From Perna viridis (Eukaryota): a DNA stretch of 64,000 nucleotides. Shown piece by piece: positions 2,176 to 25,967 of this stretch (positions are counted from its first letter, which is position 1; the number at the start of each line of letters is the position of its first letter). The notes under the pieces were generated by a model. It was not told the DNA's origin and made no database searches. It was given only the letters and a program-made list of their open reading frames with translations. The translations under genes were made by a program, and so were the position numbers. The stretch spans positions 24,793,840 through 24,857,839 of the forward strand of contig CM074525.1 of assembly GCA_037379345.1 (NCBI GenBank). Reading direction: 5' to 3'.

Positions 2176-2180
2176 TTAAC
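2176..2180 (-). CDS. Last exon, coding part (completes Ser codon, then TAA)
   Basis: ctctattttgcag acceptor at 2181-82, then GT TAA. Confidence 0.65.
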
Positions 2181-3423
2181 CTGCAAAATAGAGACATGTA
2201 AAGTCAAAAACTTTTACAGTGGGATTAAGATCAGATCTCAAATACAAAAACAACAGTAACTTAACGACAATACAAAAAAAAACTGAAGAAGTGCGTATCT
2301 AATGCATTGTAAAACTATTTCAGGAACTATAATATATACGAGCCGAAAGTGCAAAAACTGTTTTAATTCCAATCCCAAGTGTAACTAGAAAAAAATATTA
2401 GTTAAAATAATGTTACATGTAAGCTGGGAAAGTTTATCGAATTATGGAAACATGCTGCAACGATGGTTTCCTTTCCTTTACCGACAGGTGATTGGAACAT
2501 TCTTTGTATAAATTAAAATTCTAATTTGACGTCTTAATATCGTCAAACAGCATATGTCGGTACAACCCCCACCTTCAGCACATACGCACTGTCTCTTTTC
2601 TTTCGCTGTCGCTTCGAGACAAAACACTCATTTAAAAACGTTTATGCGATAATTTAACAGCTGCGAGGTTATCTAATTGAAATCAATTATATAAATACAC
2701 ACATTTAACACATACGATGACATAAATATTCAAATTTAACCCAACTTCCATACGGGGGAGGTTAAACGGAACAGCCGTTATTTTGGCTACGCCTAGGAAA
2801 AATTTTTTCACAAAAATAACCGTATTTGTCATATTGAAAGAGAAATAATTTTTTCCGAGGGTAGATTCGTCCTCATTTTAACATGTGTTTGTCATTTATA
2901 TTCTCATTTAACACCTCCCTGTCGCTGGGTGTTAAATAATCGATTATAAATGCCGTAAAATGAGTACAAATATACCCCTCCATGAATTATTTCTTAAATC
3001 TACCATATCTTCGTATTACCATTCAGTACCATTTTATTAGATATATAAAACATAGCTATTTGTACACATGCAAAATATGTTTCATGTACAATTCGTGCGA
3101 ATTGAGCTTCTAGTAAAATTCATGAAATCATCGTGATTTTCACGTGAAATTCACTTATGAAATTCACAGAGAATTCATTGACAGATCGATTCTCGTGAAT
3201 TTCACGTGAGCTATGTCAAAAATTGTCTTTGCTCAATTCAGGTGCAAATCATTTGAAATTTTACTAAAATCGTGTGAATAATTTTGCTTATGTATACGAA
3301 TTTTATGAAAATTTTATTTTACGAAAATAACAAACTTATTTTGGCGTAATGTGCAGAATGAGTGAGCGGCTCAGACTACTTGTGACGTAATGTGCAGAAT
3401 GACTTATTATGACGTATACTTAC

Positions 3424-3513
3424 TACTTCGACATTCACAGATTCTACAGTGTGCTACGTCATACTTTACACAAGACGGGTGACAGTTTGGAGGCAAGGGA
3501 CGACATTCAGATC
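3424..3513 (-). CDS. C-terminal variant Cys module exon (SECRPLPPNCHPSCVKYDVAHCRICECRS)
   Basis: ttgccag acceptor, GTAAGT donor, 90 nt; same Cys spacing class as exon 2. Confidence 0.85.
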
Positions 3514-3945
3514 CTGGCAATATTGGAAAAAGAATGTAGATTTAACAGCTAGACTTTGTTAGACATTCAAATTTAATTTCAGATATCATGACACGACCCA
3601 AAATGATAATAAATAAAACATGTCATGCGCTTGAATGAAAAAGGCTTTTAAGTGTATGTATTAAAATCAAAATATGTTTGATACTTTTTCGCATATGTTC
3701 AAATAAATCTTTAAAATGTGTTTACTAAGTTCCCATATTTCTAACATGTTGCTATTTTTATCACATTAATGACGAATTATATTTTCTTTCATAGTGGGCT
3801 GGTGTTTGATTATCAGATGATTATTTCCTTAACATATTGAATGGTGTAAATATCCATATGGATATAGCAAGAGCAAACGAGACATCATCTTTTACAAGCG
3901 GTAACAAAGTTTGATTTTTGATTTGCTAATGGCTTTTCTCTATAC

Positions 3946-4077
3946 CTCCTGTCATCCCCATTCGGCCTCCGCCTCCACCAATACCACCTGACATTCCATC
4001 TCTACCTCCTCCTCCTCCTAGCATGCCACCACCGGAACCAGAATTCATGACTAATGTCCCACCTTTCAATACAAAGT
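3946..4077 (-). CDS. Gly/Met-rich exon (DFVLKGGTLVMNSGSGGGMLGGGGGRDGMSGGIGGGGGRMGMTG)
   Basis: ttctag acceptor, G|GTATAG donor, 132 nt, phase 1-1. Confidence 0.8.
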
Positions 4078-5051
4078 CTAGAATAAATTCCATTTCGTTC
4101 TTTAGGGTGCACTATACAGTTACATTAAGGCGCAGTGTTTCACACACCAAGTTACCCCGGTCAAATTTTGTAAAACTTAAAATTAAAAGTTGAAATTTGG
4201 TGGATATATTGTTTAAATGTAGTTAAGCATTTATACATAGACAGATGTTATATATGTAATGGTAAACAGGTGTAATTTAAAGGAAGAATGATATCCGGAA
4301 CGTTTCAGTCCCCTGCCGTATTACGTTCTCTCCTCAGCATTAGATGGCTGATTTTCAAAATACCTTATTTCGCACGAACTTTGGGAACTAAAATTGTGAG
4401 AGAATGAATCAAAAAGTGTCTTATTATTTTTATCCTTTTTCCAACTACTCCATGCATGCTTTCATTCTATGGTAGTGTCTAAGTGTCTGATATTTTATAA
4501 AACATAGTAATTGGCTGTTAGTTTTGGAAAGGCACCCCTGATTTGTACTAAAACTCAGTAATATTTTTTCAGTATGTTACCATGGCTTCTGGATTTTATG
4601 ACAATAATCACTAAATTACTTATAAATGACTTGAATCTCCACACACCAAGGATTTAAAAAATATGCACTTTTTTTATGACAAAACAATAGAAATTTCTGT
4701 GCAGACTGCCTCAAAACAGCTTTATTTCAACAAAATGAGACCAAATTTTAAGAAATGACCAAACTGTATTGTACTACCTTAAGAAATCAACGTTTTTCGG
4801 TACGTTTATGATTACAAGCAATTATTTGAATAAAGAAACTCTCGAATTAAAAAAAAAATTAAAGGTCAAGGTTCACAAGGAAACAAAGTCACTACAAATA
4901 AGAAGATTATTAGCTACAATTCTTAGGGTTTTCAATTGTCTGGAATTTTGACATTCAGGTAATCGAAAAAAAAATCGGAACTACCTCAAGGTTATTAATC
5001 CTATTAAAATGTGCTCCTGCAAAGCAACAAAGCGTACGAATGTTCACTTAC

Positions 5052-5075
5052 CTGCTAGTTGAATAGTGATTACCT
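5052..5075 (-). CDS. Candidate 24-nt micro-exon (EVITIQLA)
   Basis: tttag acceptor, perfect CAG|GTAAGT donor, symmetric phase 1-1, open frame. Confidence 0.45.
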
Positions 5076-5639: not shown

Positions 5640-5915
5640 CTGATGTTCCGCATTCATGGCACTCTTCTTTAGCAGGCTGAACGACCTTCACTGGCTGGAC
5701 GACCTTGATAGTCTCACAGTTATGACACGACTCTTTTTGTTGAACTACAACCACAGGTTTCTTAACCTCACATGTGTTACACTCCTGAGAGCATCGACAA
5801 CTAGGACAACCATTATGGTCCTTGTTACCAAGGATATAACCATGCTCGCACGTAGCCATACAAGAAATGGTGACGTCACAACTTCGGGAGCTATGGCAAG
5901 TATCACATGTCTCTT
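5640..5915 (-). CDS. Exon, antistasin-like module plus CxxC-containing Val/Gln/Lys spacers
   Basis: CDVTISCMATCEHGYILGNKDHNGCPSCRC; G|GTAACA donor; 276 nt; overlaps ORF 5542..5859. Confidence 0.88.
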
Positions 5916-6059
5916 CTATACAGCAAAATATATGGGAAAAAACTTTATCGAATATTCAAGTGATAGCAACGATTAAATGCGGTAATATAGAAAATAGAAA
6001 AGATTATACTGGTCTGACCACACAAAAAATTGTTACCATGTACGCATCGCAATTTTATA

Positions 6060-6458: not shown

Positions 6459-6635
6459 TCTGAACCCTTGCGCATGTGCATGCTGGACAGCCGTCATGAC
6501 CTGCACTACCAAGCGTATATCCCTCTTTACATGACGTCATACAGTTGAAAGTTGAAGGACACTGTTTTAAGATGGTAACGGCCTCAGTTTTGGCGGGATG
6601 TTTGATCGGTTCTGTTACAATGACCGGCTTTTGTT
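6459..6635 (-). CDS. Exon, antistasin-like module (CPSTFNCMTSCKEGYTLGSAGHDGCPACTC)
   Basis: cttttccag acceptor, A|GTATAT donor (weak), 177 nt, phase 1-1; overlaps ORF 6283..6540. Confidence 0.85.
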
Positions 6636-6947: not shown

Positions 6948-6953
6948 TTTATT
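6948..6953 (-). terminator. Polyadenylation signal AATAAA (short isoform)
   Basis: About 20 nt downstream of the TGA of exon 6974..7092. Confidence 0.55.
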
Positions 6954-6973
6954 AAGTATCAATGTCACGTTGT

Positions 6974-7092
6974 TCATTCAGAAGTTTTGAGACAGTCACA
7001 TTTGGGACATCCATCAGAACCCCGGATGTAAGCCGACTTACAGACATCAGAACAAGCAAATGTCCCCATACAATCAGCCGGTGAGGTAGTTA
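6974..7092 (-). CDS. Alternative terminal exon, antistasin-like module (CMGTFACSDVCKSAYIRGSDGCPKCDCLKTSE*)
   Basis: Strong cttttttcag acceptor, in-frame TGA at 6974-6976, AATAAA at 6948-6953. Confidence 0.75.
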
Positions 7093-7407
7093 CTGAAAAA
7101 AGAAGGCAATATTCTTATACAAGCAGACGTCGATTTAGCGCAAAAAAACTGAGTGATCTCAAGTCAATTGAGAATCAAATCAATATGTATGCGATGTTAG
7201 TAATTTGCGGTTGTCAGTTAAAATTATTAAGATATTACAATGTTTAATCCTGCCTTGATATTAAGATTAGTTTCCAATTTTAAACAACAGTAGAGATATG
7301 CTTCCAAGTTTCAATTTTATGAACATCACATATCCATGAATGGTATAGATATTCCAACTTACTACCTATTTTTGACTTCTATGTGCAACAATATAACAAC
7401 GAAGGAA

Positions 7408-8820
7408 AGGTCCTGTGATGTAGCCATGCAGGAATGAAAACTTACCGTAACCTCCAGCACAGTTACAGGAAGGACACCCGTCAGGTCCTAGGATGTAGCC
7501 ATGTGGGGATGAAAACTTACCGTAACCTCCAGCACAGTTACAGGAAGGACACCCGTCAGGTCTTGTGATGTAGCCATGGGGGGGGGTGAAAACTTACCGC
7601 AACCTCCAGCACAGTTACAGGAAGGACACCCGTCAGGTCCTAGGATGTAGCCATGCGGGAAATGAAAACTTACCGTAACCTCCAGCACAGTTACAGGAAC
7701 GACTCCCGTCAGGTCTTGTGATGTAGCCATGCGGGGGTGAAAACTTACCGCAACCTCCAGCACAGTTACAGGAAGGACACCCGTCAGGTCCTAGGATGTA
7801 GCCATGCGGGGATGAAAACTTACCGTAACCTCCAGCAGTTCCAGGAAGGACACGTCAGGTCCTAGGATGTAGCCATGCGGGGATGAAAACTTACCGTAAC
7901 CTCCAGCAGTTCCAGGAAGGACACGTCAGGTCCTAGGATGTAGCCATGCGGGGATGAAAACTTACCGTAACCTCCAGCACAGTTACAGGAAGGACACCCG
8001 TCAGGTCCTGGGATGTAACCATGCGGGGATGAAAACTTACCGTAACCTCTAGCAGTTACAGGAACGACTCCCGTCAGGTTCTGAGATGTAGCCATGCGGG
8101 GATGAAAACTTACCGTAACCTCCAGCACAGTTACAGGAAGGACACCCGTCAGGTCCTGTGATGTAGTCATGCGGGAATGAAAACTTACCGTAACCTCCAG
8201 CAGTTACAGGAAGGACACCCGTCAGGTCCTGAGATGTGGCCATCGACAAATGAAAACGCCGTAACCTCCAGCAGTTACAGAAAGAACACATCAGGTCCTA
8301 GGATGTAGCCATAGGGGATGAAAACTTACCGTAACCTCCAGCAGTTCCAGGAAGGACACCCGTCAGGTCCTGGGATGTAGCCAAGCGTGGATGAAAACTT
8401 ACCGTAACCTCCTGCACAGTTACAGGAAGGACACCCGTCAGGTCCTGAGATATGGCCATCGGGAAATGAAAACTTACCGTAACCTCCAGCAGTTCCAGGA
8501 AGGACACGTCAGGTCCTAGGATGTAGCCATCGGGGATGAAAACTTACCGTAACCTCCAGCACAGTTACAGGAAGGACACCCGTCAGGTCCTGAGATGTGG
8601 CCATCGGGAAATGAAAACTTACCGTAACCTCCAGCAGTTACAGGAAGGACACGTCAGGTCCTAGTATGTAGCCATCGGGGATGAAAACTTACCGTAACCT
8701 CCAGCAGTTCCAGGAAGGACACCCGTCAGGTCCTAGGATGTAGCCATCGGGGATGAAAACTTACCGTAACCTCCAGCACAGTTACAGGAAGGACACCCGT
8801 CAGGTCCTGGAATGTAGCCA
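7408..8820 (-). repeat. Minisatellite, about 70-76 bp x about 19, made of the exon 11 3' end plus its splice donor
   Basis: Unit GGCTACATCCTAGGACCTGACGGGTGTCCTTCCTGTAACTGTGCTGGAGGTTACG|GTAAGTTTTCATCCCCGCAT. Confidence 0.95.
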
Positions 8821-8881
8821 ACGGAGCATTCATGTGGACAATAAAATGTGGTAGAACACGCCATTACATGTGAATGTTGGC
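8765..8881 (-). CDS. Exon 11, antistasin-like module (CSTTFYCPHECSVGYIPGPDGCPSCNC)
   Basis: tttttacag acceptor, G|GTAAGT donor, 117 nt. Confidence 0.88.
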
Positions 8882-9377
8882 CTGTAAAAAGTTAAGCACG
8901 GGTGAATATTGGCCTATTTACAGTTAAGCATGTGTAAATTTTGGCCTTAATAATTGTCCTAATCAGTTTTCCTTAATAACTCCACTTTCATACGAATATC
9001 ATATTTTGAAACAAATTGCGTTATGTGAAAAGTAAGTCAGAGTCAAAACTCCATCAAAAAGATGATATTCTTCATGCCCGCTAAATATAACGTGATATAT
9101 TTCTAGATATTTATACCATTACCTTCAATCTACAATTAATGTGTAGTGGGTCTAGATATTTATGAAAGGTGAAACTTCGGTCCAGCAATATGCTATCATG
9201 TCTCATTTTTGCACAAACTTTTCACGATATCCTAAAATCTTCCAACAAAGGGAGACGGCCTAATGCTTGGGTCCCTCCTTGGGTCAGCCACTGATTATAC
9301 ATCAGTTATTTTTTTCTTGATTAAAAAGATAACAATACAGAAAAAGACTATAGAGGAAACCTTTATGGTAACCTTAC

Positions 9378-11030
9378 CATAGTTGTTTCCGGCTGCTGAA
9401 TGTGCACCTCCACTTGTCGGTGGAGTTGATGTTACCAGTGGTAACTGTTGACCAGAACTCTGTTTCCCTGTGGTCGGTTGACCAATGGCTGAAAATGGCC
9501 CCTGACCTTGACCTTTCCCAACTTGACCTTGACCAAAAATCTGGTTTTGATGAGGCAAACCTTGCATCGTTTCTCCTTTAGCACCAAGACATGAACATGA
9601 TGGACATCCCTTCTCGTCTGCCTCTTTTAGCTGATAACCCATTGGGCATTGCCCCATGCAATGCATTGTTTCTGGACAATTCTTGATAATAAAAGAAGGA
9701 TCTACATTTGCGTTGTTCTGAAGACCTAATAAACCAGTACCATGCACTGGGTTTATTGGTCCCTGACCTCCCCCTGTTGTTGGTCCGTGACCGCCCTGCA
9801 TTGAAGTAAAAGGTCCCTGACTGGATCCCGTTTGTGGTCCTTGACCGCCTTGTATTGAAGTAAACTGTCCCTGATTAGATCCTGTCTGTGATCCATGGCC
9901 GCCCTGAATTGCAGTAAATGGTCCCTGACTGGACTGCGTTTGTGGTCCGTGACTGCCCTGCATTGTGCTATATGGTCCTTGGTTGGTACTAAATGGGCCA
10001 TGACTACCTACAGTTTGAGAACTCTGCCCAACTTGTATTTGACCACTGCCGTTGGACATTCCTTGACCACCAATGTTAGAAGTGCCGGTTGTTCCAGCAA
10101 ATGGTCCTTTTCCGGAACTGTCTCCTGTTTGAGCAAAAGGACCTTGTCCAGTACTTCCACTCGCTGCTTGTGAATAAGGGCTTGGTTTAAACCCATCATT
10201 GGTAAAGAACCCGTATCCAGAGGCTTGAAACGGTCCCGTACCAGTCGTGTTCATACCAGCTACCGGACCTTGATTGGTCAAAATATTTCCAAATGACTGT
10301 GACACTGTACCAGAACCCATCCCACTCTGTGTAATTCCGGTACCAGAATTTGATTGTGATATACTTAGTCCCGAATTTTGCCCTCCAGTATTAACTAGAT
10401 TGTTATTTTGCTGTACCTCAGTCTGTCCACTTCCTGTTCCTGTACTTGTCATTCCTCCTCCGTAAGAATTAGGATTAAAAGGACCACTTCCGGCCATACC
10501 TTGTCCGTTCCCAGCTCCACCTGAACCCTGGCCTGCATTTCCAAAAGAATTAGGGTTAAAAGGACCACTTCCGGCCATACCCTGTCCGTTAACGACTCCA
10601 CCTGAACTGTGTCCTTTACCACTGTATGTGTTCGGGTTAAAGGGTCCGCTCCCGCCCATTGAGTTGAATGGACCTTGACCGATGCTTCCCAATGGTCCCT
10701 GGACTTTTCCTGATGAACTCTGACCCCCTCCAAAACCTTGTCCAACACTTCCCAAAGGGTGTTGGCTAAATCCGCTATTTATAAAACCTCCACCCTGTCC
10801 CGCGGTCATTCCAACAGATTGTCCTCCATTTACCATGGCCTCTGGGCTGTTGTTTGAAGTTGACCCAGATGAACTACAGTCATGACAGGAACCGGTAGTG
10901 TGTGTAGTAAACTGTATATTTGGTTGAACTTTAGTTTCGCAGTTACCGTTACACGTTTTAGTATTAGAATGAACAACAACATAATTGCTACCCGTATTGG
11001 CGTTATTACAGCCGTTGCTACACTTCTGGT
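9378..11030 (-). CDS. Exon 10, large G/Q/S/P-rich low-complexity exon with one antistasin-like module (CPETMHCMGQCPMGYQLKEADEKGCPSCSC)
   Basis: Lies within the 591-aa ORF 9295..11070; ttgtag acceptor at 11031-32, G|GTAAGG donor; 1,653 nt, phase 1-1. Confidence 0.92.
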
Positions 11031-11279
11031 CTACAACACATATTGTTACAAAAGTTAAAAGTTGTACCATATAACGTGGTTATAGTGAGCGTTAAAAAAG
11101 CTGAGATTGAGAAGTGACTTTCGCACTTATAAGCAACCTTTTTTACAAGTCATTGAAAAGGGCATGGGCCAAAATAACATGGATGCTATAAGTTTATAAT
11201 AAAAGCATTAAAATGTTAAAAAATTCTCATTAATATTTTATGCTGGTAGGACGAAAGTATAAAAACTAAATAATACATG

Positions 11280-12096
11280 TACTTTTACCTGTATATCGTA
11301 TTCTCTATCAATTAAATGAACATGTATGTAATCTTATAAAGTATATTTACCAGTATCTAACCATATATCAATTACATTTACCTGTATGTAACCCTATTAA
11401 ATATATTTACCTGATCTTACCATTTAACAATTATGTATACTAGAATGATACTCTATAAATATAAATTTACATGTTCATTACCACCTATTAAAATTACCTG
11501 TATGTAACCTTATAAAGTACATTTACCAGTATCTAACCATCCATCAATTATATTGACCTGTATGTAACTCTATAAAGTACATTTACCCGTATATTACCAT
11601 TTATCAATTACGTATACCTGAATGTAACCCTATAAAGTAAATTTACCTCTTTCCTACCATCTATCAATTAAATTAACATGTATGTAACCTTAGAAACGAC
11701 GATTTCTTTATATTTTTACCATTTATCGATTATGTTTACCAGTATGTAATCCTATAAAGTACATGTTCTTAAATGTAACCAGGTAAAGAACAGTAACTAG
11801 TATGTTACCTCATAAACTAGGTATACATGTATCTTACCATCTATCAATTAAATTTACCTGTATTTAACCGTAACCAGTACATTTACCTGTATGTTACCTT
11901 TTATCGTATGTTTATCAGTATCTTACTTTTTATCGTATGTTTATCTGTATGTTACCTTTTATCGTAGGTTTACCTGTATGTTACCTTTTATCGTGTGTTT
12001 ATATGTATGTTAATGTTACCTTTTACCGTATGTTTATCTGTATGTTACCTTTTTATCGTATGTTTACCTGTATGTTACGTTTTATCGTATGTATAC
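11280..12096 (-). repeat. Degenerate about 30/60-bp tandem array rich in CAGGTAAA, next to the exon 9 donor
   Basis: Plus-strand units tttacctgtatgttaccttttatcgtatg and atttacctgtatgtaaccttataaagtac. Confidence 0.8.
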
Positions 12097-12243
12097 CTGG
12101 ATGGACAGCAACAAGACATTCACAGGTAGGACAACCATCAGTTCCACATTTGTATCCCAGAGAACATTTACTAGGACAGGAGAATGTAGCAGAGCATGTC
12201 ACTTGTTTCTGTACAACTTCTACGACCTTGGTCAAACCCACGA
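12097..12243 (-). CDS. Exon 9, antistasin-like module with extra Cys (CSATFSCPSKCSLGYKCGTDGCPTCEC)
   Basis: ttgcag acceptor, G|GTATAC donor, 147 nt; overlaps ORF 12053..12241. Confidence 0.88.
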
Positions 12244-12744
12244 CTGCAATATATAAAAATACAAACAGACTAGCGAATAATGGTCAACTTCTACAACTCT
12301 ATTCAAACTAACGATTACAATATATAAAAACAAACATTAGCAAACGAATGGACGGACAACTTCTACAACCTTTGAGAAAAAACAACAATATATGGTAGAC
12401 ATAACAATAACAAACAGTTGATGATTTATTTCTGCTGCAATAAACCAAAAACAACAAAATATAAACTAATAAAACAGATAAAAACACTAACAGACGGACG
12501 GACATACAACCTTTAATTATCCAATGGCTACAAAATATGTCCAAGAAATAAAATAACAAACAATCATTTCTGCAATTGTACAAATAAAATATGTGTTAGC
12601 TTAAAGGACGGAAACATATATATTGTAAAATTTACGATAGTAAACTGACGAACATTTGACAACTTTGCTACAAATTTAGCAAAACAAATTTTAGCGGTAG
12701 AAGGTAGCGATGTTCCCATATGCTAGTTTAACCATCGGTATGTA

Positions 12745-12902
12745 CTTGGGTTTGATACAGTCACATCTAGTACGTACCTTGTGGGTTGATACAGTCACAT
12801 CCAGTACGTACCTTGTGGTTTGATACAGTCACATCCAGTACGTACCTTATGGGTTGATACAGTCATATCAAGTACGTACCTTGTGGTTTGATACAGTCAC
12901 AT
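12745..12902 (-). repeat. About 34-bp x 4-5 repeat of the exon 8 3' end plus donor
   Basis: ATGTGACTGTATCAAACCACAAG|GTACGTACT reiterated. Confidence 0.9.
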
Positions 12903-12999
12903 GTTGGACATCCATCAGTCCCACACTTGTAACCCACATTACATCCAGATGAACATTTGAGAGAACTAGAACAAGTCAGCTGCATAACCACAACTTTTG
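12880..12999 (-). CDS. Exon 8, antistasin-like module with extra Cys (CSSSLKCSSGCNVGYKCGTDGCPTCDC)
   Basis: ttccag acceptor, G|GTACGT donor, 120 nt, phase 1-1. Confidence 0.88.
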
Positions 13000-13039
13000 C
13001 TGGAATTTAAGAAAATATTAAAGTTATTCTTCTTTTCTC

Positions 13040-14439
13040 TATATCTTCCTCCACTTACTGGAGTACACCAATACTGCAGCTGGTTCAAAATCTAATCATC
13101 TCATTATTAACAAGCAGGAACAGTTAAACTTTAGAACGATTGTTCTATACTCACAACTGTCAAAGAGGGTCTGCAGTTCTACCACAACACTTGTTACTCC
13201 AGTAGTGGTATTAATTCAATGTGGATCCTGAAAAATTCGAAAGATCTTTTGGAGACAATCAGTTCAAGACTATTATCTGAATATAATAACATTAAACCCT
13301 ATGATTATTCAACACTGTATACTTCTATTCCCCATACTCAGTTAAAATCCCGACTTAAAAACATTATACATCGTTGTTTTTCCATAAAAGATGGTACCCC
13401 TAGATACAAATATATAGTTCTTGGTAAAGATTCCTCATACTCTGTAAGAAATAATTCCAAATCATCTTCCAAATATACAGAGGAAGATGTTTACAAAATG
13501 CTGGAATTTTTAATCGACAACATATTTATCCAGTGTGGTGGACGTGTTTTTCAACAAACGGTCGGCATTCCAATGGGAACACATTGTGCTCCTTTACTTG
13601 CTGACCTATTCCTTCACTCTCTCTTATGAGGCTGACTTTATAGCTGATCTGATCAGAAAGAAAGAATATCGTTAGGCTAGATCCTTCAATCTCAGTTTAC
13701 GCTATACAGATGATGTATTATCTTTAAACAATCTTAATTTCGGGGATTTGATACATCGCATCTACCAAAAAGTACTTGAGATAAAGGATACTACAGCCTC
13801 ATTTCTTGACCTACACTTGGAAATCGATGGTGAAGGAAAACTATTGACCAAACTTTACGACAAACGTGATAACTTTTCATTCAGAATTGTCAAGTTTCCT
13901 TTCATCTGTGGCAACATCCCTTCAGCACCTGCGTATGGAGTGTTCATATCACAACTCATATGTTATGCCAGAGCTTGCCGAAAATACGCAGACTTTTTGT
14001 ATCGCGCTAGAACTCTACCAAATAGGCTTCTGGAACAGCGTTATGTTGCTACAAGATTGAAATCATCACTACAGAAGTTTTATGGTCGCCATCATGAACT
14101 CGTGGAACGTTATGGTGTATCCACCTGCACCATGGAAACTGATTTATTCAACGGGTCATAGTTTCCTTTTCCTCGTTTGTCTACCCTGGACTTGACTTTT
14201 GATAAGCAACTCGGCGGGTGTTTCTAGAAAAGCAGAGGACGCTTACCCTACTGGTGCACCTGGTCCATGCTCCCGGTTTTTTGTGGAGACCGAGTTGCTC
14301 ATTTCTTTTGTTGCTTTGTGTGTACGATTTTAGTTGCTTTGTGTTCTTTGTTATGTGTGTCTGTTTTCCATGACTGGTCTTTGTCCCTGGATTACATTCT
14401 TTTGATTACTGCTATAACCTTGGTTCCCTTGATTACTCT
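13040..14439 (+). mobile_element. Penelope-like retroelement (Naiad-type, RT at C-terminus), 5'-truncated and decayed
   Basis: MWILKNSKDLL, YDYSTLYTSIPH, GIPMGTHCAPLLADLFL, RYTDD, YGVFISQL, KFYGRH motifs. Frameshift near 13620 and an internal TAG. The ORF ends without a GIY-YIG domain. The 3' end ...GGTTCCCTTGATTACTCT is shared with many copies. Confidence 0.88.
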
Positions 14440-18166: not shown

Positions 18167-18304
18167 GAACGATACATGTGCATTCTTGACAACCATTAGA
18201 TTTAGTAGCTCCGAGTTGGTATCCGTTTTTACACGTCAGCATACACATTACTGTGGACATACAACTCATCTTCGCGGGTGCTTTTGTTGGAGCTGGAGTC
18301 GGTT
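18167..18304 (-). CDS. Exon 7, antistasin-like module (CMSTVMCMLTCKNGYQLGATKSNGCQECTC)
   Basis: CAG acceptor, GTAAGT donor, 138 nt, phase 1-1. Confidence 0.88.
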
Positions 18305-18307
18305 CTG

Positions 18308-18690: not shown

Positions 18691-18843
18691 CTGGAGCACA
18701 TGAGCATGTGTTACATCCATCACGTCCTTTTGCCCCGAGAACATAACGAGATTTGCAGGTCATCATGCACAATTTGGTTCCGGTGCACGACGCTTGTTTC
18801 TGTTGAACTACATATGTCACGTGAGTCTGTGGCTTCGCTACGT
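18691..18843 (-). CDS. Exon 6, antistasin-like module (CTGTKLCMMTCKSRYVLGAKGRDGCNTCSC)
   Basis: Open 153-nt exon, G|GTAGGT donor, paralogous to exon 5. Confidence 0.88.
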
Positions 18844-18963
18844 CTTAACAAAAATGGAATTTGAAAGTATAACTAAGTTTTGAAGTAAGTCCAATTTATA
18901 AAATATAATCAAAGAAGTGTGTTTCATGTATCATTGGGGTAACGCATGATGATGTGACCGATT

Positions 18964-19390
18964 GCCCCGTGCAGGTCCGGGTGTCAAAGGAATAGGCCTA
19001 CAGCAGCGCAAAGCTTGTCGTAACTGGGATGTGTGCCCCAGGTGGTGGAATGGGGGACCCCTGGCGTGTTACATGCTGGGGTTGTCAGGCTATAATACGG
19101 AAAACCTGACCGCAAACCATAGTGGTGCACCGTGTTCGGAAAGATGCCACGTTCCTCGCGCGTTATAGAACCCTGCTGTGGTATACGATGGGAGAAGGAA
19201 CCTTTGCGCTTCGCTAAATTGCCCGACCCTACCCATCGCCCCCCTTTTTCTAGTGGCAATCAAAATTTGTCGACCCTGTTGTCCTTGTGTCCCATCCCTC
19301 GTTTTCATTTCATCATCATTTATGTTCATTTTATCACCCATTTCATTGCCTGGATATAGCTGAAATATTGCTGCTCGGGCGTTAAACCCC

Positions 19391-19424: not shown

Positions 19425-19878
19425 TAAGCAATGTTTGTTAAAAAGAAGTCATTAATAGAACAGAAAGTGATACCCTACCAAGTTATCATCCCGAAACCAT
19501 CGGGTTGGACGGAGGGACGGACGGACACGCAACTTTTCGAAGTGTATCACATGATACTTCGCCACTTCGTGTGGCGAGGTATAAAATCAGAAAATAGAAT
19601 CAACTTTTAAATGACAATCGTCCCTTATTCGTCGTCTCGTCATTGTGGGCGTGGTTATAATGTAGACAACTAATCAAAAGTCCTTGAACAATTATAATTT
19701 GCAACGAAAGTTAATGTCAAGGAAAATGCTAAGATGAACTGATTAACTCAAATACGTTGTTGGGTTTCCGCTCTGTTTTCTTTGCTACATCTAGGTTTAT
19801 TTATACTGGTTTAAATGAGAAAAGGTGGCCTACTGATACCACAGGATCTAAGTCAGAAATTAAGTCAGATAGGAATAT

Positions 19879-21090
19879 AAAGTGCTGTAAAGACCAGCAT
19901 TACATCGTGATACCTAACGTTTGTTTAGGAAGTAAAGTGGTGTAAAGACCAGCATTACATCGTGATACCTAACGCTTGTTTAGGAAGTAAAGTGGTGTAA
20001 AGACCAGCATTACATCGTGATACCTAACGCTTGTTTAGGAAGTAAAGTGCTGTAAAGACCAGCATTACATCGTGATACCTAACGCTTGTTTAGGAAGTAA
20101 AGTGCTGTAAAGACCAGCATTACATCGTGATACCTAACGCTTGTTTAGGAAGTAAAGTGCTGTAAAGACCAGCATTACATCGTGATACCTAACGTTTGTT
20201 TAGGAAGTAAAGTGGTGTAAAGACCAGCATTACATCGTGATACCTAACGCTTGTTTAGGAAGTAAAGTGGTGTAAAGACCAGCATTACATCGTGATACCT
20301 AACGCTTGTTTAGGAAGTAAAGTGGTGTAAAGACCAGCATTACATCGTGATACCTAACGCTTGTTTAGGAAGTAAAGTGGTGTAAAGACCAGCATTACAT
20401 CGTGATACCTAACGCTTGTTTAGGAAGTAAAGTGCTGTAAAGACCAGCATTACATCGTGATACCTAACGCTTGTTTAGGAAGTAAAGTGCTGTAAAGACC
20501 AGCATTACATCGTGATACCTAACGCTTGTTTAGGAAGTAAAGTGCTGTAAAGACCAGCATTACATCGTGATACCTAACGCTTGTTTAGGAAGTAAAGTGG
20601 TGTAAAGACCAGCATTACATCGTGATACCTAACGTTTAGGAAGTAAAGTGGTGTAAAGACCAGCATTACATCGTGATACCTAACGCTTGTTTAGGAAGTA
20701 AAGTGCTGTAAAGACCAGCATTACATCGTGATACCTAACGCTTGTTTAGGAAGTAAAGTGCTATAAAGACCAGCATTACATCGTGATACCTAACGCTTGT
20801 TTAGGAAGTAAAGTGCTGTAAAGACCAGCATTACATCGTGATACCTAACGCTTGTTTAGGAAGTAAAGTGCTGTAAAGACCAGCATTACATCGTGATACC
20901 TAACGCTTGTTTAGGAAGTAAAGTGCTGTAAAGACCAGCATTACATCGTGATACCTAACGCTTGTTTAGGAAGTAAAGTGGTGTAAAGACCAGCATTACA
21001 TCGTGATACCTAACGTTTGTTTAGGAAGTAAAGTGGTGTAAAGACCAGCATTACATCGTGATACCTAACGCTTGTTTAGGAAGTAAAGTG
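19879..21090. repeat. 55-bp minisatellite, about 22 near-identical copies (intronic)
   Basis: aaagtgctgtaaagaccagcattacatcgtgatacctaacgcttgtttaggaagt. Confidence 0.97.
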
Positions 21091-21192: not shown

Positions 21193-21340
21193 ATGATGAA
21201 TGCGAGCTAACTTGAGTCATGTGACTTGTCTTACACGTACAACTTTTACATCCGTTTCTGCCAACTTGCCCTAGAGAGTAACGTCCCTTACATGTCTGCA
21301 TACAAAGTTTCGTACCAGGGCACTGACTTAACGGCTTAGC
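21193..21340 (-). CDS. Exon 5, antistasin-like module (CPGTKLCMQTCKGRYSLGQVGRNGCKSCTC)
   Basis: tttttcag acceptor, GTAAGT donor, 148 nt, phase 0 to 1. Confidence 0.88.
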
Positions 21341-21360
21341 CTGAAAAATAAAAAAATCAA

Positions 21361-21605
21361 AGCGTTCTCTGCTTTTCTAGGAACACCAGCCGAGCTGCTC
21401 ATAAAAAGTCAAGTTCGGGGTAGACGAAAGAGGAAAGGAAAACTATGACACGTTAATTGAACAACTCATGGTGCAAATGGATACACCGTAACTATCCACG
21501 AGTTCATGAAGGTGAACATAAAACTGTATTGGTGGCTTAAAACATGTAGCACCATAACCCTGTTCCAGAAGCCTAATTGTAAGAAGTCTAGCGCGGTGCA
21601 AAGGT
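21361..21605 (-). mobile_element. Penelope-like RT C-terminal fragment
   Basis: RARLLTIRLLEQGY...HELVDSYGVSICTM; matches 14000-14245. Confidence 0.8.
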
Positions 21606-21785
21606 ACATTACAATGGTCGACATCCAACACAGAGAACACATCAAACGCATCTATTGATTATTAGCACATATCGGCTCGCCATATTGGCGAATACATGTA
21701 TGATAGGTCCAGGATATGCAAATCCTAATTCAAATATTGACTTACAAAACAAATCAATCAGCAGTCACTCCGTCAACAAACTTAC

Positions 21786-21844
21786 TTTCACGGCTCCAAA
21801 TCCCGACATCGATCCTGGTACAAATCCTCCACCACCCATATGAA
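21786..21844 (-). CDS. Exon 4 (HMGGGGFVPGSMSGFGAVK)
   Basis: ttttgtag acceptor, GTAAGT donor, phase 1 to 0, matching the phase-0 start of the next exon. Confidence 0.8.
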
Positions 21845-22428
21845 CTACAAAATTATAGATGATTAAATGCACAGCAAAAGGGAGACAACGCTTCATGCAT
21901 CCTGTTGGTACGTTTTACAGGTTGTATTGCTGTGATCAGAACTGTCTATGAAGGTATACGTTTTCATTGTTTTTCTTGTACAAACTGTTTATTTATTATT
22001 GTACGGGCGGTACCAGTTTTTCGGCCCAACCGAAAAGGGAATTCCCCATTGGTATACTTTAGGGATACAATTTGACTTATTTTTCTTGCACTATAAATAT
22101 TGCTATCCACCAGTTACAGTACTTTTACAGTATATATAATTCACATTAGTAAAGTTTTTTTTGCCTCGAAGGTTTGCGGCTAGAAAAATCCAGAACAAAA
22201 ACTCCAAGCTCCAAAACAGCGTCTGACTTTCGAATTTCACTATAAACGGTGCAGAAAATGTAAGAAATTTACGCGACGTTTATCCGATTTGATTTGAATA
22301 ATGTCCGAGAATCTCGGAAGGCCTGTCTGCAGTGGTTAGTAAGATCGAAAACGAACGAGTGTCGTGGAGCTTGCAAAAACTGATCCTGACTCCCCACTTT
22401 AAACTAAAAACGATCACTTCTCACTTAC

Positions 22429-22467
22429 CTTGTGGCATACCATGGTAACCCCCTGGATGAAAATTTA
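22429..22467 (-). CDS. Exon 3 (NFHPGGYHGMPQ)
   Basis: ctttctatttcag acceptor, G|GTAAGT donor, 39 nt, phase 1-1. Confidence 0.75.
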
Positions 22468-23254
22468 CTGAAATAGAAAGACACAAATATGAAACATAAA
22501 GTGCATTAATGATGAAAAATAGAAACAAAGTGGAAACAAAAGGTAACTAAGAGGTAGTATGAATACATTTTGCCACTGTTTTACCAAGAGATTGAATCTG
22601 AGGGTAGAAACCCACTGATATTCTGTTTTACCAAGAAATTGAATCTGAGGGTAGAAAATGGAACCAAAGTTGATTGAAGGGTACAGGTTGGTAGAACTGC
22701 TATAACGCCAGTCAATCCTTGACGATTACAAGTAATGTATTTGTTTTCATTCATTTTTTACCTAAAGCGGTCGGAAGAACATATCTATGTTTAGTCCTAG
22801 TAAGATGTATAAATGCACACTTATTAAACTAAAAACAAGCATTATTCGTTGTATAAAACATCATTTTTTTTGTTTATCTCAGAATTTTGCAGTCTTTAAA
22901 TATTTAAGTATAAATTAATTTCAGAAGTAACATGCCTTCTGATTGGATATTAAATTCCGTCTATCTTCTCATGACGTCATAAACCTTTTTAATGATTTAT
23001 TCGTTGGATGTTTAACTTGACTGGGATTATTTCTTTATAGAACGAAAAAATATCACAGCATCCTTCAATATCCATCCACGCCCTATAGATCTCTTGTCGA
23101 TCTGAAGTGCTGTAAACATACACCAATACGAGTATACGTACCATGTAAAATAATCATCTTATGTAAATGTCAAGAAATCTGTACCAAGCACTTGTAAGGA
23201 AATGGTTCTAGGAATTACTAAACTGACACAACCAGCCATAGTTAATATGATTTA

Positions 23255-24750
23255 GGGTGCACACAACTAATTATATTATTATAATTCCAGGGCTCCAGGG
23301 CTGTCTAGATAGATATATAGTGCACACAGTTAATTATGTTATTCCAGGGTTGTCTAGATAGAAATAGAGTGCACGTAATTATATTATTCCGGGGCTGTCT
23401 AGATAGAAATAGAGTGCACATAACTATTTATATGATTCCGGGGCTGTCTAGATAGAAATAGGCAGCACATTACTAATTATGTTATTCCGGGGCTGTCTAG
23501 ATAGAAATAGAGTGCATATAACTAATTATATTATTCTGGGGCTGTCTAGATAGAAATAGAGTGCACACAACTAATTATGTTATTCCAGGGCTGTCTAGAT
23601 AGAAATAGAGCTCATATAACTAATTATATTATTCTGGGGCTGTCTAGATAGAAATAGAGTGTACATAATTATATTATTCTGGGCTGTCTAGATATAAATT
23701 GAGTGCACATAACTAATTACATTATTTCAGCGCTGTCTAGATAGAAATAGTGTGCACATAACTAATTATATTATTTCAGCGCTGTCTAGATAGAAATTGA
23801 GTGCACATAATTATATTATTCCGGGGCTGTCTAGATAGAAATAGAGTGCACATAACTAATTATATTATTTCAGCGCTGTCTAGATAGAAATAGGGAGCAC
23901 ACAACTAATTATATTATTCCGGGGCTGTCTACATATAAATAGAGTGCACATAACTGATTATATTATTTCAGCGTTGTCTAGATAGAAATAGGGAGCACAC
24001 AACTAATTATATTATTCCGGGGCTGTCTACATATAAATAGAGTGCACATAACTGATTATATTATTTCAGCGCTGTCTAGATAGAAATAGAGTGTACATAC
24101 TTATATTATTCTGGGCTGTCTAGATATAAATTGAGTGCACATAACTAATTATATTATTTCAGCGCTGTCTAGATAGAAATAGGGAGCACACAACTAATTA
24201 TATTATTCCGGGGCTGACTAAATAGAAATTGAGTGCACATAACTAATTATATTATTTCAGCGCTGTCTAGATAGAAATAGAGTGCACATAACTAATATTT
24301 TTTCAGCGCTGTCTAGATAGAAATAGGGAGCACACAACTAATTATATTATTCCGGGCTGTCTAAATAGAAACTGAGTGCACATAACTAATTATATTATTT
24401 CAGCGCTGTCTAGATAGAAATAGGGGGCACACAACTAATTATATTATTCCGGGGCTGTCTAGATAGAAATAGAGTGCACACAACTAATTATATTATTTCA
24501 GCGCTGTCCAGATAGAAATAGAGTGCACATAACTAATTATATTATTTCAGCGCTGTCTAGATAAAATAGGAATTACACAACTAATTATATTATTCCGGGG
24601 CTGTCTAGATAAAATAGGGAGCACACAACTAATTATATTATTCCGGGGCTGTCTAGATAGAAATAGAGTGCACAAAACTACTTATATTATTTCAGCGCTG
24701 TCTAGATAGAAATTGAGTGCATATAACTAATTATATTATTTTAGCGCTGT
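23255..24750. repeat. About 49-bp minisatellite, about 30 copies, two alternating variants
   Basis: gctgtctagatagaaatagagtgcacataactaattatattatt(ccggg|tcagc). Confidence 0.95.
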
Positions 24751-25386
24751 GTAGTTTTCAATGAGCAAAAGAAATAAAAATATGGATCAAAGAAAAGTGC
24801 TCCAAATCAGTTTCAAAATTCCACGAGACTTGAAAGGCCAATACATGCAACTCGTACTCTTGTTCAAACTTATTCGTACTCTTATTCAAACTGTAACAGT
24901 TAGAAGTCGCAAAATTCAAGAAAGGGCTGGAATTTCAAAAGCCTTTATTTGGTCCGGAAGGGAAAAATGTCCTGCTCCGCCAGTGGCACCAGTCGCAAAA
25001 ATCTGGTAAGTCAGAGTCTATCTACAAAAATGTCTCCCGACACACTTTGTCAAAGCAGTCATAAAGTGGTTCCACAAAAAAAAATGAAGCATGCCCATGT
25101 GTGATTCACGATTCTGGGTAGTATCATTTAATTTAACACGATGTAAACAGCACTGATCTAATACACAGTTAGTTCAACTTCCGAACGCAGAACCGTCGAT
25201 CTTAACTGAACTTGATTACATACATGTACTTTATATAAATCATGCGAAAATTATCCAACCCATCAACATGAACTTTTTCATTTCGATTTTTTTAACGGAA
25301 ATAAAAATGTAAAATTATGGAGAAATAAAAATTATGGAGAAATAATGCAACTAAATTGTAATCATATACAATATTGTGTTACTTAC

Positions 25387-25479
25387 AGACACCACAAGCA
25401 CACAACAAGCATCCTCTCTCGTCCAACTTAAAACATCCAGGAGCACATCTTGGTGGGTTTCCGCACATTCCGTAGGCAG
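25387..25479 (-). CDS. Exon 2, variant Cys module (AYGMCGNPPRCAPGCFKLDERGCLLCACGV)
   Basis: AAG acceptor, GTAAGT donor, 93 nt, phase 1-1, antistasin-type DxxGCxxCxC ending. Confidence 0.88.
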
Positions 25480-25924
25480 CTTGTAGGTACAAAATAAAAG
25501 GTTTACATTTCGAACAACTCAGGCGTCTACTTTAACCGTATCAATTTTTTGGTTTTTTTTTTTTTTTTGGTATCATTAACAGATAAAACAATATATAGAT
25601 CCTTCTACCATTCCATTCAGATCAAGAAATTTATTTTCTAATTGTTGCCCAAACTTTGCACAAATATTTTCCGACAAAATGGTGTTCTCCAATCCTGGAA
25701 CTCTCCTGTTTCTGTTTCCCTGCGTTCTAGCCAATACTTTCTCATTAATAGGATCAGAATCAGACTCCAATTTTTAACCGTATTTAGTTATTTAGTATTT
25801 AGTTATACTTTCTTGAGTTAAGTTAAATAAAAGTGTAATAATCCGTATCTGTAAGATTTGCTAAAAAGATATAAATATTTTTTTTACATAGATTTTTCCG
25901 GGTTAGTGTAACAAAAAAACTCAC

Positions 25925-25967
25925 AGCTGCCTGAAATAACCATGGACATTGTTAACCAAAACAACAT
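25925..25967 (-). CDS. Exon 1, signal peptide (MLFWLTMSMVISGS)
   Basis: ATG, hydrophobic N-terminus, GTGAGT donor, phase 1; joins to SAYG in the next exon. Confidence 0.8.

What the first reader, a model, noticed from the sequence alone, without database searches (positions are those of the whole stretch)
2176..25967. Hidden complete gene for a secreted hybrid of about 12 antistasin-like modules and a Gly/Gln-rich structural block
Seen: phase-compatible exons give a signal peptide, a variant Cys module, five antistasin-like modules, about 450 aa of G/Q/S/P low-complexity sequence, more modules, a Gly/Met linker and a terminal variant module. Known: antistasin-family folds are serine-protease inhibitors and also build structural materials such as leech cocoon protein; molluscan shell and byssus matrices combine inhibitor domains with low-complexity regions. 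Inference: a self-protecting, disulfide-crosslinked extracellular material protein (shell, periostracum, byssus or mucus). I cannot match this architecture to a named protein.
Basis: partly seen in the sequence, partly recalled or inferred. Interest (0 to 1): 0.75.

Follow-up and report, generated by a model that had tools for sequence, protein, structure and literature searches.

The report
Alternatively spliced mussel antistasin-repeat matrix gene
This is a real, expressed bivalve gene for a secreted protein made of antistasin-like cysteine modules, whose large glycine/glutamine-rich block is an optional, alternatively spliced part; uncharacterised relatives are already annotated in mussel and oyster genomes.

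Summary
Twelve modules share six invariant Cys. Nine of 12 module pieces hit Pfam Antistasin, two at or above the cut-off.

Spliced contigs from three RNA-type runs confirm these junctions: E5>E6, E6>E7, E7>E8 (the 1,653-nt low-complexity exon), E8>E9 and E9>E10.

One 12-module chain is not supported.
- E10 carries an in-frame TGA followed by AATAAA, and it cannot join E11 in frame.
- Two runs join E7 directly to E11, skipping the low-complexity exon, E9 and E10.
- So at least two products exist. One is about 929 aa with the Gly/Ser/Gln block. The other is about 526 aa without it, ending in the Gly/Met linker and variant module.
- E2 and E3 are phase-incompatible unless a predicted 59-nt micro-exon (21844-21786) is used. 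Homology supports that exon.

Collinear but uncharacterised relatives exist: Mytilus coruscus "unnamed protein product" (1,275 aa), Ostrea edulis LOC125663075 (1,454 aa), and Pinctada and Tegillarca models.

Tissue and function remain untested. This is an ordinary new member of an annotated family, with a useful splicing detail.

The parts
25925..25967 (-). E1: start codon plus hydrophobic leader (MLFWLTMSMVISGS, then 1 nt). Donor GTGAGT, leaves phase 1.
   Evidence: Read. The same leader-plus-variant-module start occurs in P0027 and P0029. No RNA junction was seen. SignalP is not available here.
25387..25479 (-). E2: short 6-Cys variant module (93 nt, phase 1-1).
   Evidence: 93% identical to M. 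coruscus P0031 residues 211-240. No Pfam hit on its own.
21786..21844 (-). E2b: predicted 59-nt Gly/Met-rich micro-exon (phase 1 in, 0 out). It is needed to link E2 to E3.
   Evidence: It was the only candidate found by the splice/phase scan of 21341-25386. Its sites were read. tblastn of P0031 residues 254-282 hits it at E 0.005. No RNA junction was seen.
21193..21340 (-). E3: antistasin-like module (148 nt, phase 0 in, 1 out).
   Evidence: 78% identical to P0031 and 61% to T. granosa P0005.
18691..18843 (-). E4: antistasin-like module (153 nt).
   Evidence: Pfam Antistasin 14.4 bits. 70% identical to P0005. It has no equivalent in the P0031 model.
18167..18304 (-). E5: Pro/Thr/Ala linker plus module (138 nt).
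   Evidence: The donor at 18167 is joined to 12999 in a run X9 contig: loose end, mapped exactly to 18167-18196. Pfam 18.7 bits.
12880..12999 (-). E6: module (120 nt). Its donor is the first of a 34-nt tandem array of copies.
   Evidence: The joint 12880>12243 is seen in 3 of 3 contig runs, from three studies. The array is at 12747-12902.
12097..12243 (-). E7: module (147 nt). This is the branch point of the two splice forms.
   Evidence: Pfam Antistasin 21.2 bits, equal to the cut-off. The donor at 12097 joins 11030 in X9 and joins 6635 in X17 and X18.
9378..11030 (-). E8: 1,653-nt cassette exon. It encodes three CxxC-type Cys pairs, a 379-aa uncharged G/S/Q/T/N/P block with 11 GPF motifs in the exon, one module, and a 70-aa G/Q-rich tail.
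   Evidence: Covered by contigs in X9, X17 and X18. Single copy in the 723-Mb genome. 50% identical (277 of 550) to P0031, with conserved islands.
8765..8881 (-). E9: module (117 nt).
   Evidence: Joints 9378>8881 and 8765>7092 are in one X17 contig.
7408..8820 (-). Intronic 75-nt minisatellite (about 19 copies) made of the 3' end of E9 plus its splice donor.
   Evidence: The whole array is skipped in the one contig that crosses it, and the first donor (8765) is used.
6948..7092 (-). E10: module, then in-frame TGA (6976-6974) and AATAAA (6953-6948). It is the terminal exon of the low-complexity-containing form.
   Evidence: Sequence read. The X17 contig enters at 7092 and reads through the internal GTAAGT to the end of the laid stretch at 7030.
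6459..6635 (-). E11: linker plus module (177 nt). It is the first exon after the skip in the short form.
   Evidence: Loose ends of X17 and X18 contigs after 12097 map exactly to 6606-6635. 84% identical to P0031. The donor was not seen in RNA.
5640..5915 (-). E12: CxxC, a module, then three CxxC pairs in a Val/Gln/Pro/Lys linker (276 nt).
   Evidence: Pfam Antistasin 22.1 bits, above the cut-off. 66% identical to P0031. Junctions were not seen directly.
3946..4077 (-). E13: Gly/Met-rich linker (132 nt).
   Evidence: Collinear with P0031 residues 1189-1233. Junctions were not seen.
3407..3513 (-). E14: terminal variant 6-Cys module. It either reads through to the TAA at 3409-3407, or is spliced at 3424 to E15.
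   Evidence: 86% identical to P0031, whose model continues '...SSKY...' as in the read-through.
2176..2180 (-). Unverified alternative 3' end.
   Evidence: Sequence only.

Best explanation
This is one expressed gene of a mytilid-like bivalve. It encodes secreted proteins built from antistasin-like 6-Cys modules, nearly all on their own phase-1 exons.

Structure:
- A common 5' part holds the leader, one short variant module, a small Gly/Met linker and five modules.
- Form A continues from this part into a 1,653-nt exon. That exon encodes an uncharged, Phe-punctuated Gly/Ser/Gln/Thr/Asn/Pro block with one embedded module. Two more module exons follow, and the second carries its own stop and poly(A) signal. 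The total is about 929 aa.
- Form B skips those three exons. It continues into two modules, a CxxC-rich linker, a Gly/Met linker and a terminal variant module. The total is about 526-530 aa.

Shown: the exons, six junctions, the branch at E7, the terminal nature of E10, and collinear relatives in mussel, oyster, pearl oyster and ark clam.

Inferred:
- Secretion.
- The modules act as canonical serine-protease inhibitor heads. Six of 12 have Met at the position that aligns with the P1 residue of guamerin and antistasin, which would point to chymotrypsin- or elastase-type targets.
- The optional low-complexity block makes the inhibitor array self-associate or embed in an extracellular matrix or gel. 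Splicing would then switch between a soluble and a matrix-bound form.

My confidence in the structural part is about 0.85. My confidence in the functional part is about 0.35.
For: RNA evidence:
- One search gave joints with CT..AC ends on the + strand (GT..AG on the minus strand): 12243/12880 in 3 of 3 contig runs, 11030/12097 in X9, 8880/9377 in X17, and 7092/8765 in X17. Introns had zero depth.
- mapped the loose ends exactly to 6606-6635 (X17, X18) and to 18167-18196 (X9).
- One search shows the TGA and AATAAA in E10.
- The X17 contig that skips to E11 runs 725 nt beyond E7. E11-E14 sum to 675 nt.
- Exon lengths sum to multiples of three for both forms only if the 59-nt exon is included.

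Module evidence:
- six invariant Cys in 12 of 12 modules.
- PF02822 hit in 9 of 12 module pieces. E12 scores 22.1 bits and E7 scores 21.2 bits, against a cut-off of 21.2.
- of 177,635 PDB sequences, only antistasin (E 0.038) and guamerin (E 0.53) match the module profile. Antistasin R34 and guamerin M36 align to the consensus Met column.

Relatives:
- collinear relatives P0031, P0027, P0028, P0029 and P0005.
- P0029, from a 2,000-nt Logan contig, has the short architecture without the low-complexity block.
- Met recurs at the aligned position in the relatives.
Against: - The E7>E8 joint rests on one contig with only 29 nt on the E7 side, below the tool's own 31-nt guide.
- E8>E9>E10 rests on one contig in one run.
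- The contig runs are labelled 'RNA? (a guess)'. The one certified raw RNA run (X23) gave only 2 reads.
- The M. coruscus and O. edulis gene models show a single chain that continues from the low-complexity exon into the E11-E14 equivalents. The O. edulis model uses an E10-like module as an internal exon. A third, long form (E9>E11) may therefore exist here too.
- Single modules score at or below the Pfam cut-off. None of the window's modules reached E <= 0.001 in the genome-wide PF02822 scan.
- The AlphaFold model of one module was poor (pLDDT 63), and Foldseek gave no significant match.
- The modules lack the N-terminal 4-Cys subdomain of the leech inhibitors.
- No inhibitory activity, tissue or proteome evidence was obtained.
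Confidence: 0.7

Rival explanations
1. The reader's single long chain, minus E10, is the main product. It would run leader, variant module, five modules, low-complexity exon, E9, then E11-E14, for about 1,116 aa.
For: - E9>E11 would be in frame.
- The M. coruscus model P0031 has exactly this order, E9-like followed directly by E11-like. The O. edulis model P0027 is also one chain.
Against: - It was not seen. The only contig across the E9 donor goes to E10, which has its own stop and AATAAA.
- The contigs that reach E11 come straight from E7, and at higher word depth (17.2 against 2.4-4.9 in X17).
- P0031 and P0027 are computed gene models. I could not check what evidence they rest on.
Confidence: 0.15
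2. It is a purely structural material protein of byssus, shell, periostracum or hinge ligament. In this reading the Cys modules act as cross-linking or metal-binding units, not as inhibitors.
For: - Antistasin-domain proteins are reported in Perna viridis byssus (PMC6508894, passages read), in Lottia shell matrix (PMC3374290, passages) and in Pinctada nacre (PMC9290575, passage).
- The gene has Gly/Met and Gly/Ser/Gln blocks and recurrent CxxC/CHxC pairs.
Against: - No tissue or proteome evidence exists for this gene.
- Antistasin transcripts are also highly expressed in mussel digestive gland as presumed inhibitors (PMC5549309, passages).
- The low-complexity block is nearly free of Tyr (5 of 379), unlike DOPA-based byssal proteins (that comparison is recalled).
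- The P. viridis byssal antistasin-like protein (ALP) is described as 236 aa with over 20% Cys, which does not fit this gene.
Confidence: 0.25
3. These are two neighbouring genes, or a decaying pseudogene, that only look like one gene.
For: - E10 has a stop and a poly(A) signal in the middle of the locus.
- Exon-end-plus-donor arrays and transposon fragments fill the introns.
Against: - Both 3' halves are spliced to the same E7 donor.
- All exon frames are open.
- The 550-codon exon is open and 50% identical to the M. coruscus relative, with conserved islands.
- Transcripts are present in runs of three studies.
Confidence: 0.03

Closest known systems
Mytilus coruscus 'unnamed protein product' / UniRef 'Antistasin-like domain-containing protein' (P0031, 1,275 aa), and Ostrea edulis 'uncharacterized protein LOC125663075' (P0027, 1,454 aa)
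   Same: They are collinear, module by module. The shared order is: variant module, Gly/Met linker, modules, CxxC pairs, a long G/S-rich block with the conserved '...FTNDGFKPSP...' island, a module followed by '...MQGLPHQN', further modules, CxxC linker, G-rich linker, and a terminal variant module. Identity to P0031 is 78-93% in modules and 50% in the big exon.
   Different: - Both are computed single-chain models with no described function.
- P0031 lacks equivalents of E4 and E10 and carries about 205 extra N-terminal residues.
- P0027 uses an E10-like module internally.
- In this window E10 is terminal, and skipping of the block is seen in RNA contigs.
Leech antistasin-type inhibitors (antistasin 1SKZ, guamerin 3BG4, bdellastasin, hirustasin)
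   Same: They share the 6-Cys pattern C-x5-6-C-x3-C-x8-13-C-x2-C-x-C with a Gly before Cys4. They are the only PDB sequence matches and make up 3 of the 4 weak Foldseek rows. The Met after Cys2 aligns with guamerin M36.
   Different: - The leech domains have ten Cys. The modules here correspond only to the C-terminal 6-Cys part, as described for Hydra antistasin (PMC7851590, passages).
- The leech proteins have no low-complexity block.
- Inhibitory activity is untested here. The identification of those residues as P1 sites is recalled.
Lustrin A of abalone nacre (architecture recalled, not checked beyond one passage)
   Same: It is a modular extracellular protein that alternates Cys-rich modules with linkers and holds one long Gly/Ser-rich block. 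The Lottia paper notes that an antistasin-like Lottia protein resembles lustrin A residues 660-950 (PMC3374290, passage).
   Different: No sequence comparison was made here. The Cys pattern of lustrin A repeats is said in that passage to differ from the Lottia sequences. No alternative splicing of the block is known to me.
[quoted passage not shown]
   Same: It is a mussel secreted protein of repeated 30-aa units with 6 Cys and 2 Gly, found in the foot transcriptome and the byssal proteome (PMC6508894, passages).
   Different: It is 236 aa with over 20% Cys and no long low-complexity block. This gene has roughly 12% Cys in the short form by my count of modules. Its sequence sits in a figure and a supplement that I could not read.
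NCBI 'cysteine-rich motor neuron 1 protein-like' models (Mytilus californianus XP_052096536/7, P0008/P0006)
   Same: They are multi-antistasin-module proteins with a roughly 119-aa S/G/T/H-rich gap. Their modules are 40-60% identical.
   Different: They are paralogous rather than collinear. The CRIM1 name comes from automatic annotation. No VWC or IGFBP domains were seen in P0006.

Membership tests
Antistasin-like domain family (Pfam PF02822 / InterPro IPR004094) | A match to the 26-position Pfam profile at the gathering score of 21.2 bits. | tested here: met
   E12 scores 22.1 bits and E7 scores 21.2 bits. Seven more module pieces score 14.4-20.1 bits. E2, E3 and E14 gave no hit. Exons were scanned one by one and never joined.
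Antistasin-like domain family (Pfam PF02822 / InterPro IPR004094) | Six conserved Cys and the conserved Gly in the spacing C-x(4-6)-C-x3-C-...-G-C-x2-C-x-C. | tested here: met
   Six Cys columns are invariant in 12 of 12 modules, and the Gly before Cys4 is present in at least 90%. The two variant modules (E2, E14) have a shorter Cys3-Cys4 loop.
Antistasin-like domain family (Pfam PF02822 / InterPro IPR004094) | The fold of the solved inhibitors. | tested here: inconclusive
   The AlphaFold2 model of E7 with a 12-row alignment reached pLDDT 63.2. Foldseek against PDB gave 0 matches at E <= 0.001 and 4 at E <= 10, of which 3 are bdellastasin, antistasin and guamerin.
Canonical antistasin-type serine protease inhibitors (leech antistasin, hirustasin, guamerin) | A ten-Cys domain, that is, an N-terminal 4-Cys subdomain plus a C-terminal 6-Cys subdomain. 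| tested here: not met
   The modules have six Cys, and the linkers before them are Cys-free, except E12 which has one extra CxxC. They match only residues 25-54 and 79-110 of antistasin.
Canonical antistasin-type serine protease inhibitors (leech antistasin, hirustasin, guamerin) | Measured inhibition of a serine protease through a reactive-site loop after Cys2. | not testable with these tools
   Only the aligned residue can be read. It is Met in 6 of 12 modules, Pro in 2, Ser in 2, Ala in 1 and His in 1.
The bivalve family of P0031 / P0027 / P0028 / P0029 (uncharacterised 'antistasin-like domain-containing proteins') | Collinear order of module types, CxxC linkers, G-rich linkers and the terminal '...CHP.C.KYDVAHCR.C.C' module. 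| tested here: met
   The best exon-by-exon BLAST hits fall in ascending order along P0031 and P0027. E14 is 75-86% identical to the last module of all four relatives.
Secreted proteins (signal peptide) | A predicted cleavable N-terminal signal peptide. | not tested
The 14 residues of E1 are hydrophobic. Relatives start with comparable leaders.

The most novel reading that the evidence does not exclude
The optional 379-aa block may be an extracellular counterpart of cohesive FG-type domains. It is almost uncharged, rich in Gly/Ser/Gln/Asn/Thr, and has Phe every 5-22 residues in GPF motifs. In this reading, alternative splicing lets the animal switch a multi-headed protease-inhibitor array between a soluble form and a self-assembling gel or matrix form. 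The island '...GFFTNDGFKPSPYSQA...GKGPFA', conserved from mussel to oyster inside otherwise fast-evolving repeats, would be a specific docking site for a matrix partner.
Probability: 0.12. Interest if true: 0.6.

Novelty: new member of a known kind. Interest (0 to 1): 0.3.

Why it matters
Multi-antistasin proteins turn up repeatedly in molluscan byssus, shell, adhesive mucus and digestive gland, but almost none has a tested function. This locus gives a clean, RNA-supported gene structure for one conserved bivalve family. It also shows that the long low-complexity block is a splice-selected option and not a fixed domain.

That makes a simple question testable: does adding an uncharged Gly/Ser/Gln/Phe block turn a soluble inhibitor array into a matrix component? 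It also warns that the single-chain models in current mussel and oyster annotations may merge alternative forms. For most readers this remains an ordinary, uncharacterised family member.

Tried and rejected
- **Pseudogene or chance ORFs:** rejected. The frames are open, spliced contigs exist, and relatives are conserved.
- **Two genes:** rejected, because both 3' halves use the E7 donor.
- **Joining E10 to E11:** rejected. Both phase-1 internal donors (7042, 7000) give T+AA = stop, and the X17 contig reads through 7042.
- **Direct E2>E3 join:** rejected on phase. No AG in phase 1 exists at the E3 start.
- **Identity with the T. granosa SRCR/ZP fusion:** the SRCR/ZP part of P0005 has no match in the window, so the fusion is probably an annotation merge or a different locus.
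- **Searches with the big exon that found little:**
  - The search for homologous proteins: 2 hits of 8,000 candidates scored.
  - HMMER over 1.84 billion representatives: 7 hits at E <= 0.001.
  - ESM Atlas: no usable hit.
  - P0031 low-complexity region: 2 hits of 8,000 candidates.
- **Genome-wide PF02822 scan:** it listed 44 modules elsewhere but none of this gene's.
- **Structure route:** it gave a weak model and no significant fold match.
- **Literature:** searches were 'antistasin'+'byssus', 'antistasin-like'+'shell matrix', 'cysteine-rich motor neuron 1'+'bivalve', 'antistasin' with ark-clam names, with periostracum/ligament/mantle, and with 'Mytilus'. None found a paper describing this family. 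This holds only for the library searched.
- **Species:** it was not named by any tool. The best relative is M. coruscus, and the genome is 723 Mb in 46 contigs.
- **Supplements:** supplementary files were not opened. The byssal protein sequences of PMC6508894 (S9 Table) and its Fig 6 could show whether any byssal protein is this gene.

Full report
**What is there**

The window has no N. The finding's interval lies on the minus strand. A six-frame scan for Cys-rich open segments found a descending series of segments with the pattern C-x5-6-C-x3-C-...-GC-x2-C-x-C between 25531 and 3410, plus one 594-codon open segment at 11079-9298.

Reading the flanks gave canonical AG/GT sites. With one exception, all exons enter and leave in phase 1.

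An alignment of the 12 module pieces has six invariant Cys columns and a nearly invariant Gly.

**RNA evidence**

The look-up of sequencing runs listed 20 rows holding the big exon, none on record as RNA. Several small contig sets were guessed to be RNA, and there were two raw RNA runs of 2026.

I laid X9, X17 and X18 (contigs, three studies) and X23 (raw RNA) on 7030-13010. The three contig runs cover exons only, and every intron bin has zero depth. They show joints with CT..AC ends on the + strand:
- 12243/12880, in 3 of 3 contig runs.
- 11030/12097, in X9, with only 29 nt on the short side.
- 8880/9377 and 7092/8765, in one 578-nt X17 contig.

X23 gave 2 reads.

Loose ends were mapped with the DNA search:
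- The X9 contig upstream of 12999 continues with 18167-18196, which is the end of E5.
- The X17 and X18 contigs downstream of 12097 continue with 6606-6635, which is the start of E11.

The gene therefore branches at the E7 donor. It goes either into the 1,653-nt exon E8 or straight to E11, skipping E8, E9 and E10.

In X17 the skipping contig has word depth 17.2, against 2.4-4.9 for E8-E10 contigs. The tool warns that this is a poor measure of expression.

**E10 is a terminal exon here**

After the module, the E10 frame runs into TGA at 6976-6974, and AATAAA follows at 6953-6948. The X17 contig enters E10 at 7092 and reads through the internal GTAAGT at 7041 to the end of the laid stretch. Its remaining length would carry it just past the stop.

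The two phase-1 GT sites inside E10 would each leave a T. With the AA that opens E11, that makes a stop. A chain through all 12 modules is therefore not possible.

A chain E8>E9>E11 is possible in frame, but it was not seen.

**The 5' part**

E2 leaves phase 1 but E3 begins in phase 0, and no phase-1 AG exists at the E3 start. A scan of the E2-E3 intron for exons with a good acceptor and donor, phase 1 in and 0 out, gave a single candidate: 21844-21786, 59 nt, Gly/Met-rich.

The M. coruscus relative has the matching peptide between its E2-like and E3-like parts (tblastn E 0.005). The Pinctada, Ostrea and P0029 relatives also have a Gly/Met stretch there.

With this exon included, the summed exon lengths are multiples of three: 2,787 nt (929 aa) for form A and 1,578 or 1,590 nt (526 or 530 aa) for form B. 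This is arithmetic.

The X9 contig has 727 nt upstream of E6. E1 to E5 with the micro-exon sum to 634 nt, which leaves about 93 nt of 5' UTR. That would place the transcript start near 26060, about 35 nt downstream of an ATAAATAAAT at 26095-26086. This is a weak, single-contig inference.

Junctions E1>E2>E2b>E3>E4>E5 and E11 through E14/E15 were not seen directly. The X17 skipping contig does run 725 nt past E7, while E11-E14 sum to 675 nt.

**What the modules are**

- Scanned singly, 9 of 12 module pieces hit Pfam Antistasin. E12 scores 22.1 bits and E7 scores 21.2 bits, against a cut-off of 21.2. E2, E3 and E14 gave no hit.
- A profile of the 12 modules matched only two of 177,635 PDB sequences at E <= 1: antistasin 1SKZ (0.038) and guamerin 3BG4 (0.53). 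It aligned to the C-terminal 6-Cys part of each antistasin domain.
- This agrees with the description of Hydra antistasin repeats in PMC7851590 (passages read).
- The residue after Cys2 aligns with antistasin R34 and guamerin M36. I recall these as the P1 residues. The 3BG4 title names a chymotrypsin complex and elastase specificity.
- That residue is Met in 6 of 12 modules here, and Met recurs at the same position in the relatives.
- An AlphaFold2 model of E7 was weak (pLDDT 63.2). Foldseek found nothing significant, and 3 of its 4 rows at E <= 10 were antistasin-type inhibitors.

**The low-complexity exon**

E8 begins with three Cys pairs. Its next 379 aa are G27 S14 Q11 T8 N8 P7 F5 %, with 4 Lys+Arg, 4 Asp+Glu, 19 Phe and 5 Tyr. 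The exon holds 11 GPF motifs and an 18-aa repeat (54-nt period).

It is single copy in the 723-Mb genome. Homologues are very few:
- 2 of 8,000 scored candidates.
- 7 of 1.84 billion representatives at E <= 0.001.
- No usable hit in the ESM Atlas.

Aligned with the M. coruscus and O. edulis relatives, 277 of 550 residues match M. coruscus and 122 of 550 match both. The three-way identity is concentrated in two places: an island around '...GFFTNDGFKPSPYSQA...GKGPFA' and the embedded module with its '...MQGLPHQN' tail. So composition and two islands are conserved, while the repeats turn over.

**Relatives**

Cluster look-up and a region search named the relatives:
- T. granosa KAJ8311383.1, a low-quality model fused to SRCR/ZP parts that are absent from the window.
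- M. coruscus 'unnamed protein product' (P0031).
- O. edulis LOC125663075 (P0027).
- P. imbricata FSP39_005778 (P0028).
- Sinanodonta woodiana and M. trossulus models.
- Unnamed Logan proteins.

Exon-by-exon BLAST shows collinearity. P0031 is closest, at 78-93% in modules, so the organism is probably a mytilid other than Mytilus.

P0027 and P0031 are single chains containing both the big block and the E11-E14 equivalents. P0028 and the transcript-derived P0029 lack the long block. All of these are uncharacterised.

**Function**

No call gave tissue information. The literature passages I read place antistasin-domain proteins in several settings:
- P. viridis byssus (PMC6508894).
- Lottia shell (PMC3374290).
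- Pinctada nacre (PMC9290575).
- Limpet adhesive mucus (PMC7333891).
- Oyster larval shell formation (PMC5824581).
- Mussel digestive gland (PMC5549309).

My best reading is a secreted multi-headed inhibitor array whose matrix-embedding or self-associating block is added by splicing. This is inference.

**Limits**

- Read laying allowed one stretch only.
- Supplements were not read.

Noticed in passing
window 7408-8820: A 75-nt minisatellite of about 19 copies. Each copy is the last ~45 nt of exon E9 plus its GTAAGT donor and the start of the intron. The period is a multiple of three, but many copies carry 1-3-nt deletions. The one RNA contig across it uses the first donor (8765) and skips the whole array.
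   Followed up: partly
window 12747-12902: A 34-nt tandem array (4.6 copies) that repeats the E6 donor (AAGGTACGT). All three contig runs splice at the first copy (12880).
   Followed up: partly
window 19870-21090 and 23294-24754: Two large intronic tandem arrays. One has a 55-nt period with 22 copies at 97% matches. The other has a 49-nt period with about 30 copies and a 432-nt higher-order period.
   Followed up: no
window 13219-14161 (+), 32542-32850 (-), 37439-38221 (+): Reverse-transcriptase-like ORF fragments of retroelements, inside an intron of the gene and in the upstream 38 kb. No other host gene was evident in 28000-64000 from the ORF list.
   Followed up: no
window 18962-19168, 34953-35315, 58529-58807: Three copies of a repeat whose spurious ORF reads '...CPRWWNG.PL.YYMLGLSGYNTENLTANHSGAPC...'. 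It is probably a dispersed SINE-like element.
   Followed up: no
G000 contig C15 (3.40, 16.08, 20.83, 24.19-24.22, 25.54-25.61 Mb) and C9 18.68-18.71 Mb: The genome-wide Pfam scan found at least 44 stronger antistasin modules in clusters. One is a dense array on C9, and several clusters lie on the same chromosome-scale contig as this gene. One 665-aa open frame on C15 at 3.396-3.398 Mb holds at least 6 modules.
   Followed up: no
window 5640-5915 and 10850-11030: Recurrent Cys pairs (CxxC or CxxxC, often CHxC or C.xCE) sit in Val/Gln/Pro-rich linkers, three pairs in each of E8 and E12. They are conserved in the oyster and mussel relatives as '6 Cys in the gap'. They could be metal-binding or disulfide staples. 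This was not tested.
   Followed up: no
P0005 (Tegillarca granosa KAJ8311383.1): The public model fuses SRCR and ZP domains to the antistasin modules and drops the low-complexity part of the big exon. This is probably an annotation merge. UniRef therefore names it 'Deleted in malignant brain tumors 1 protein'.
   Followed up: partly
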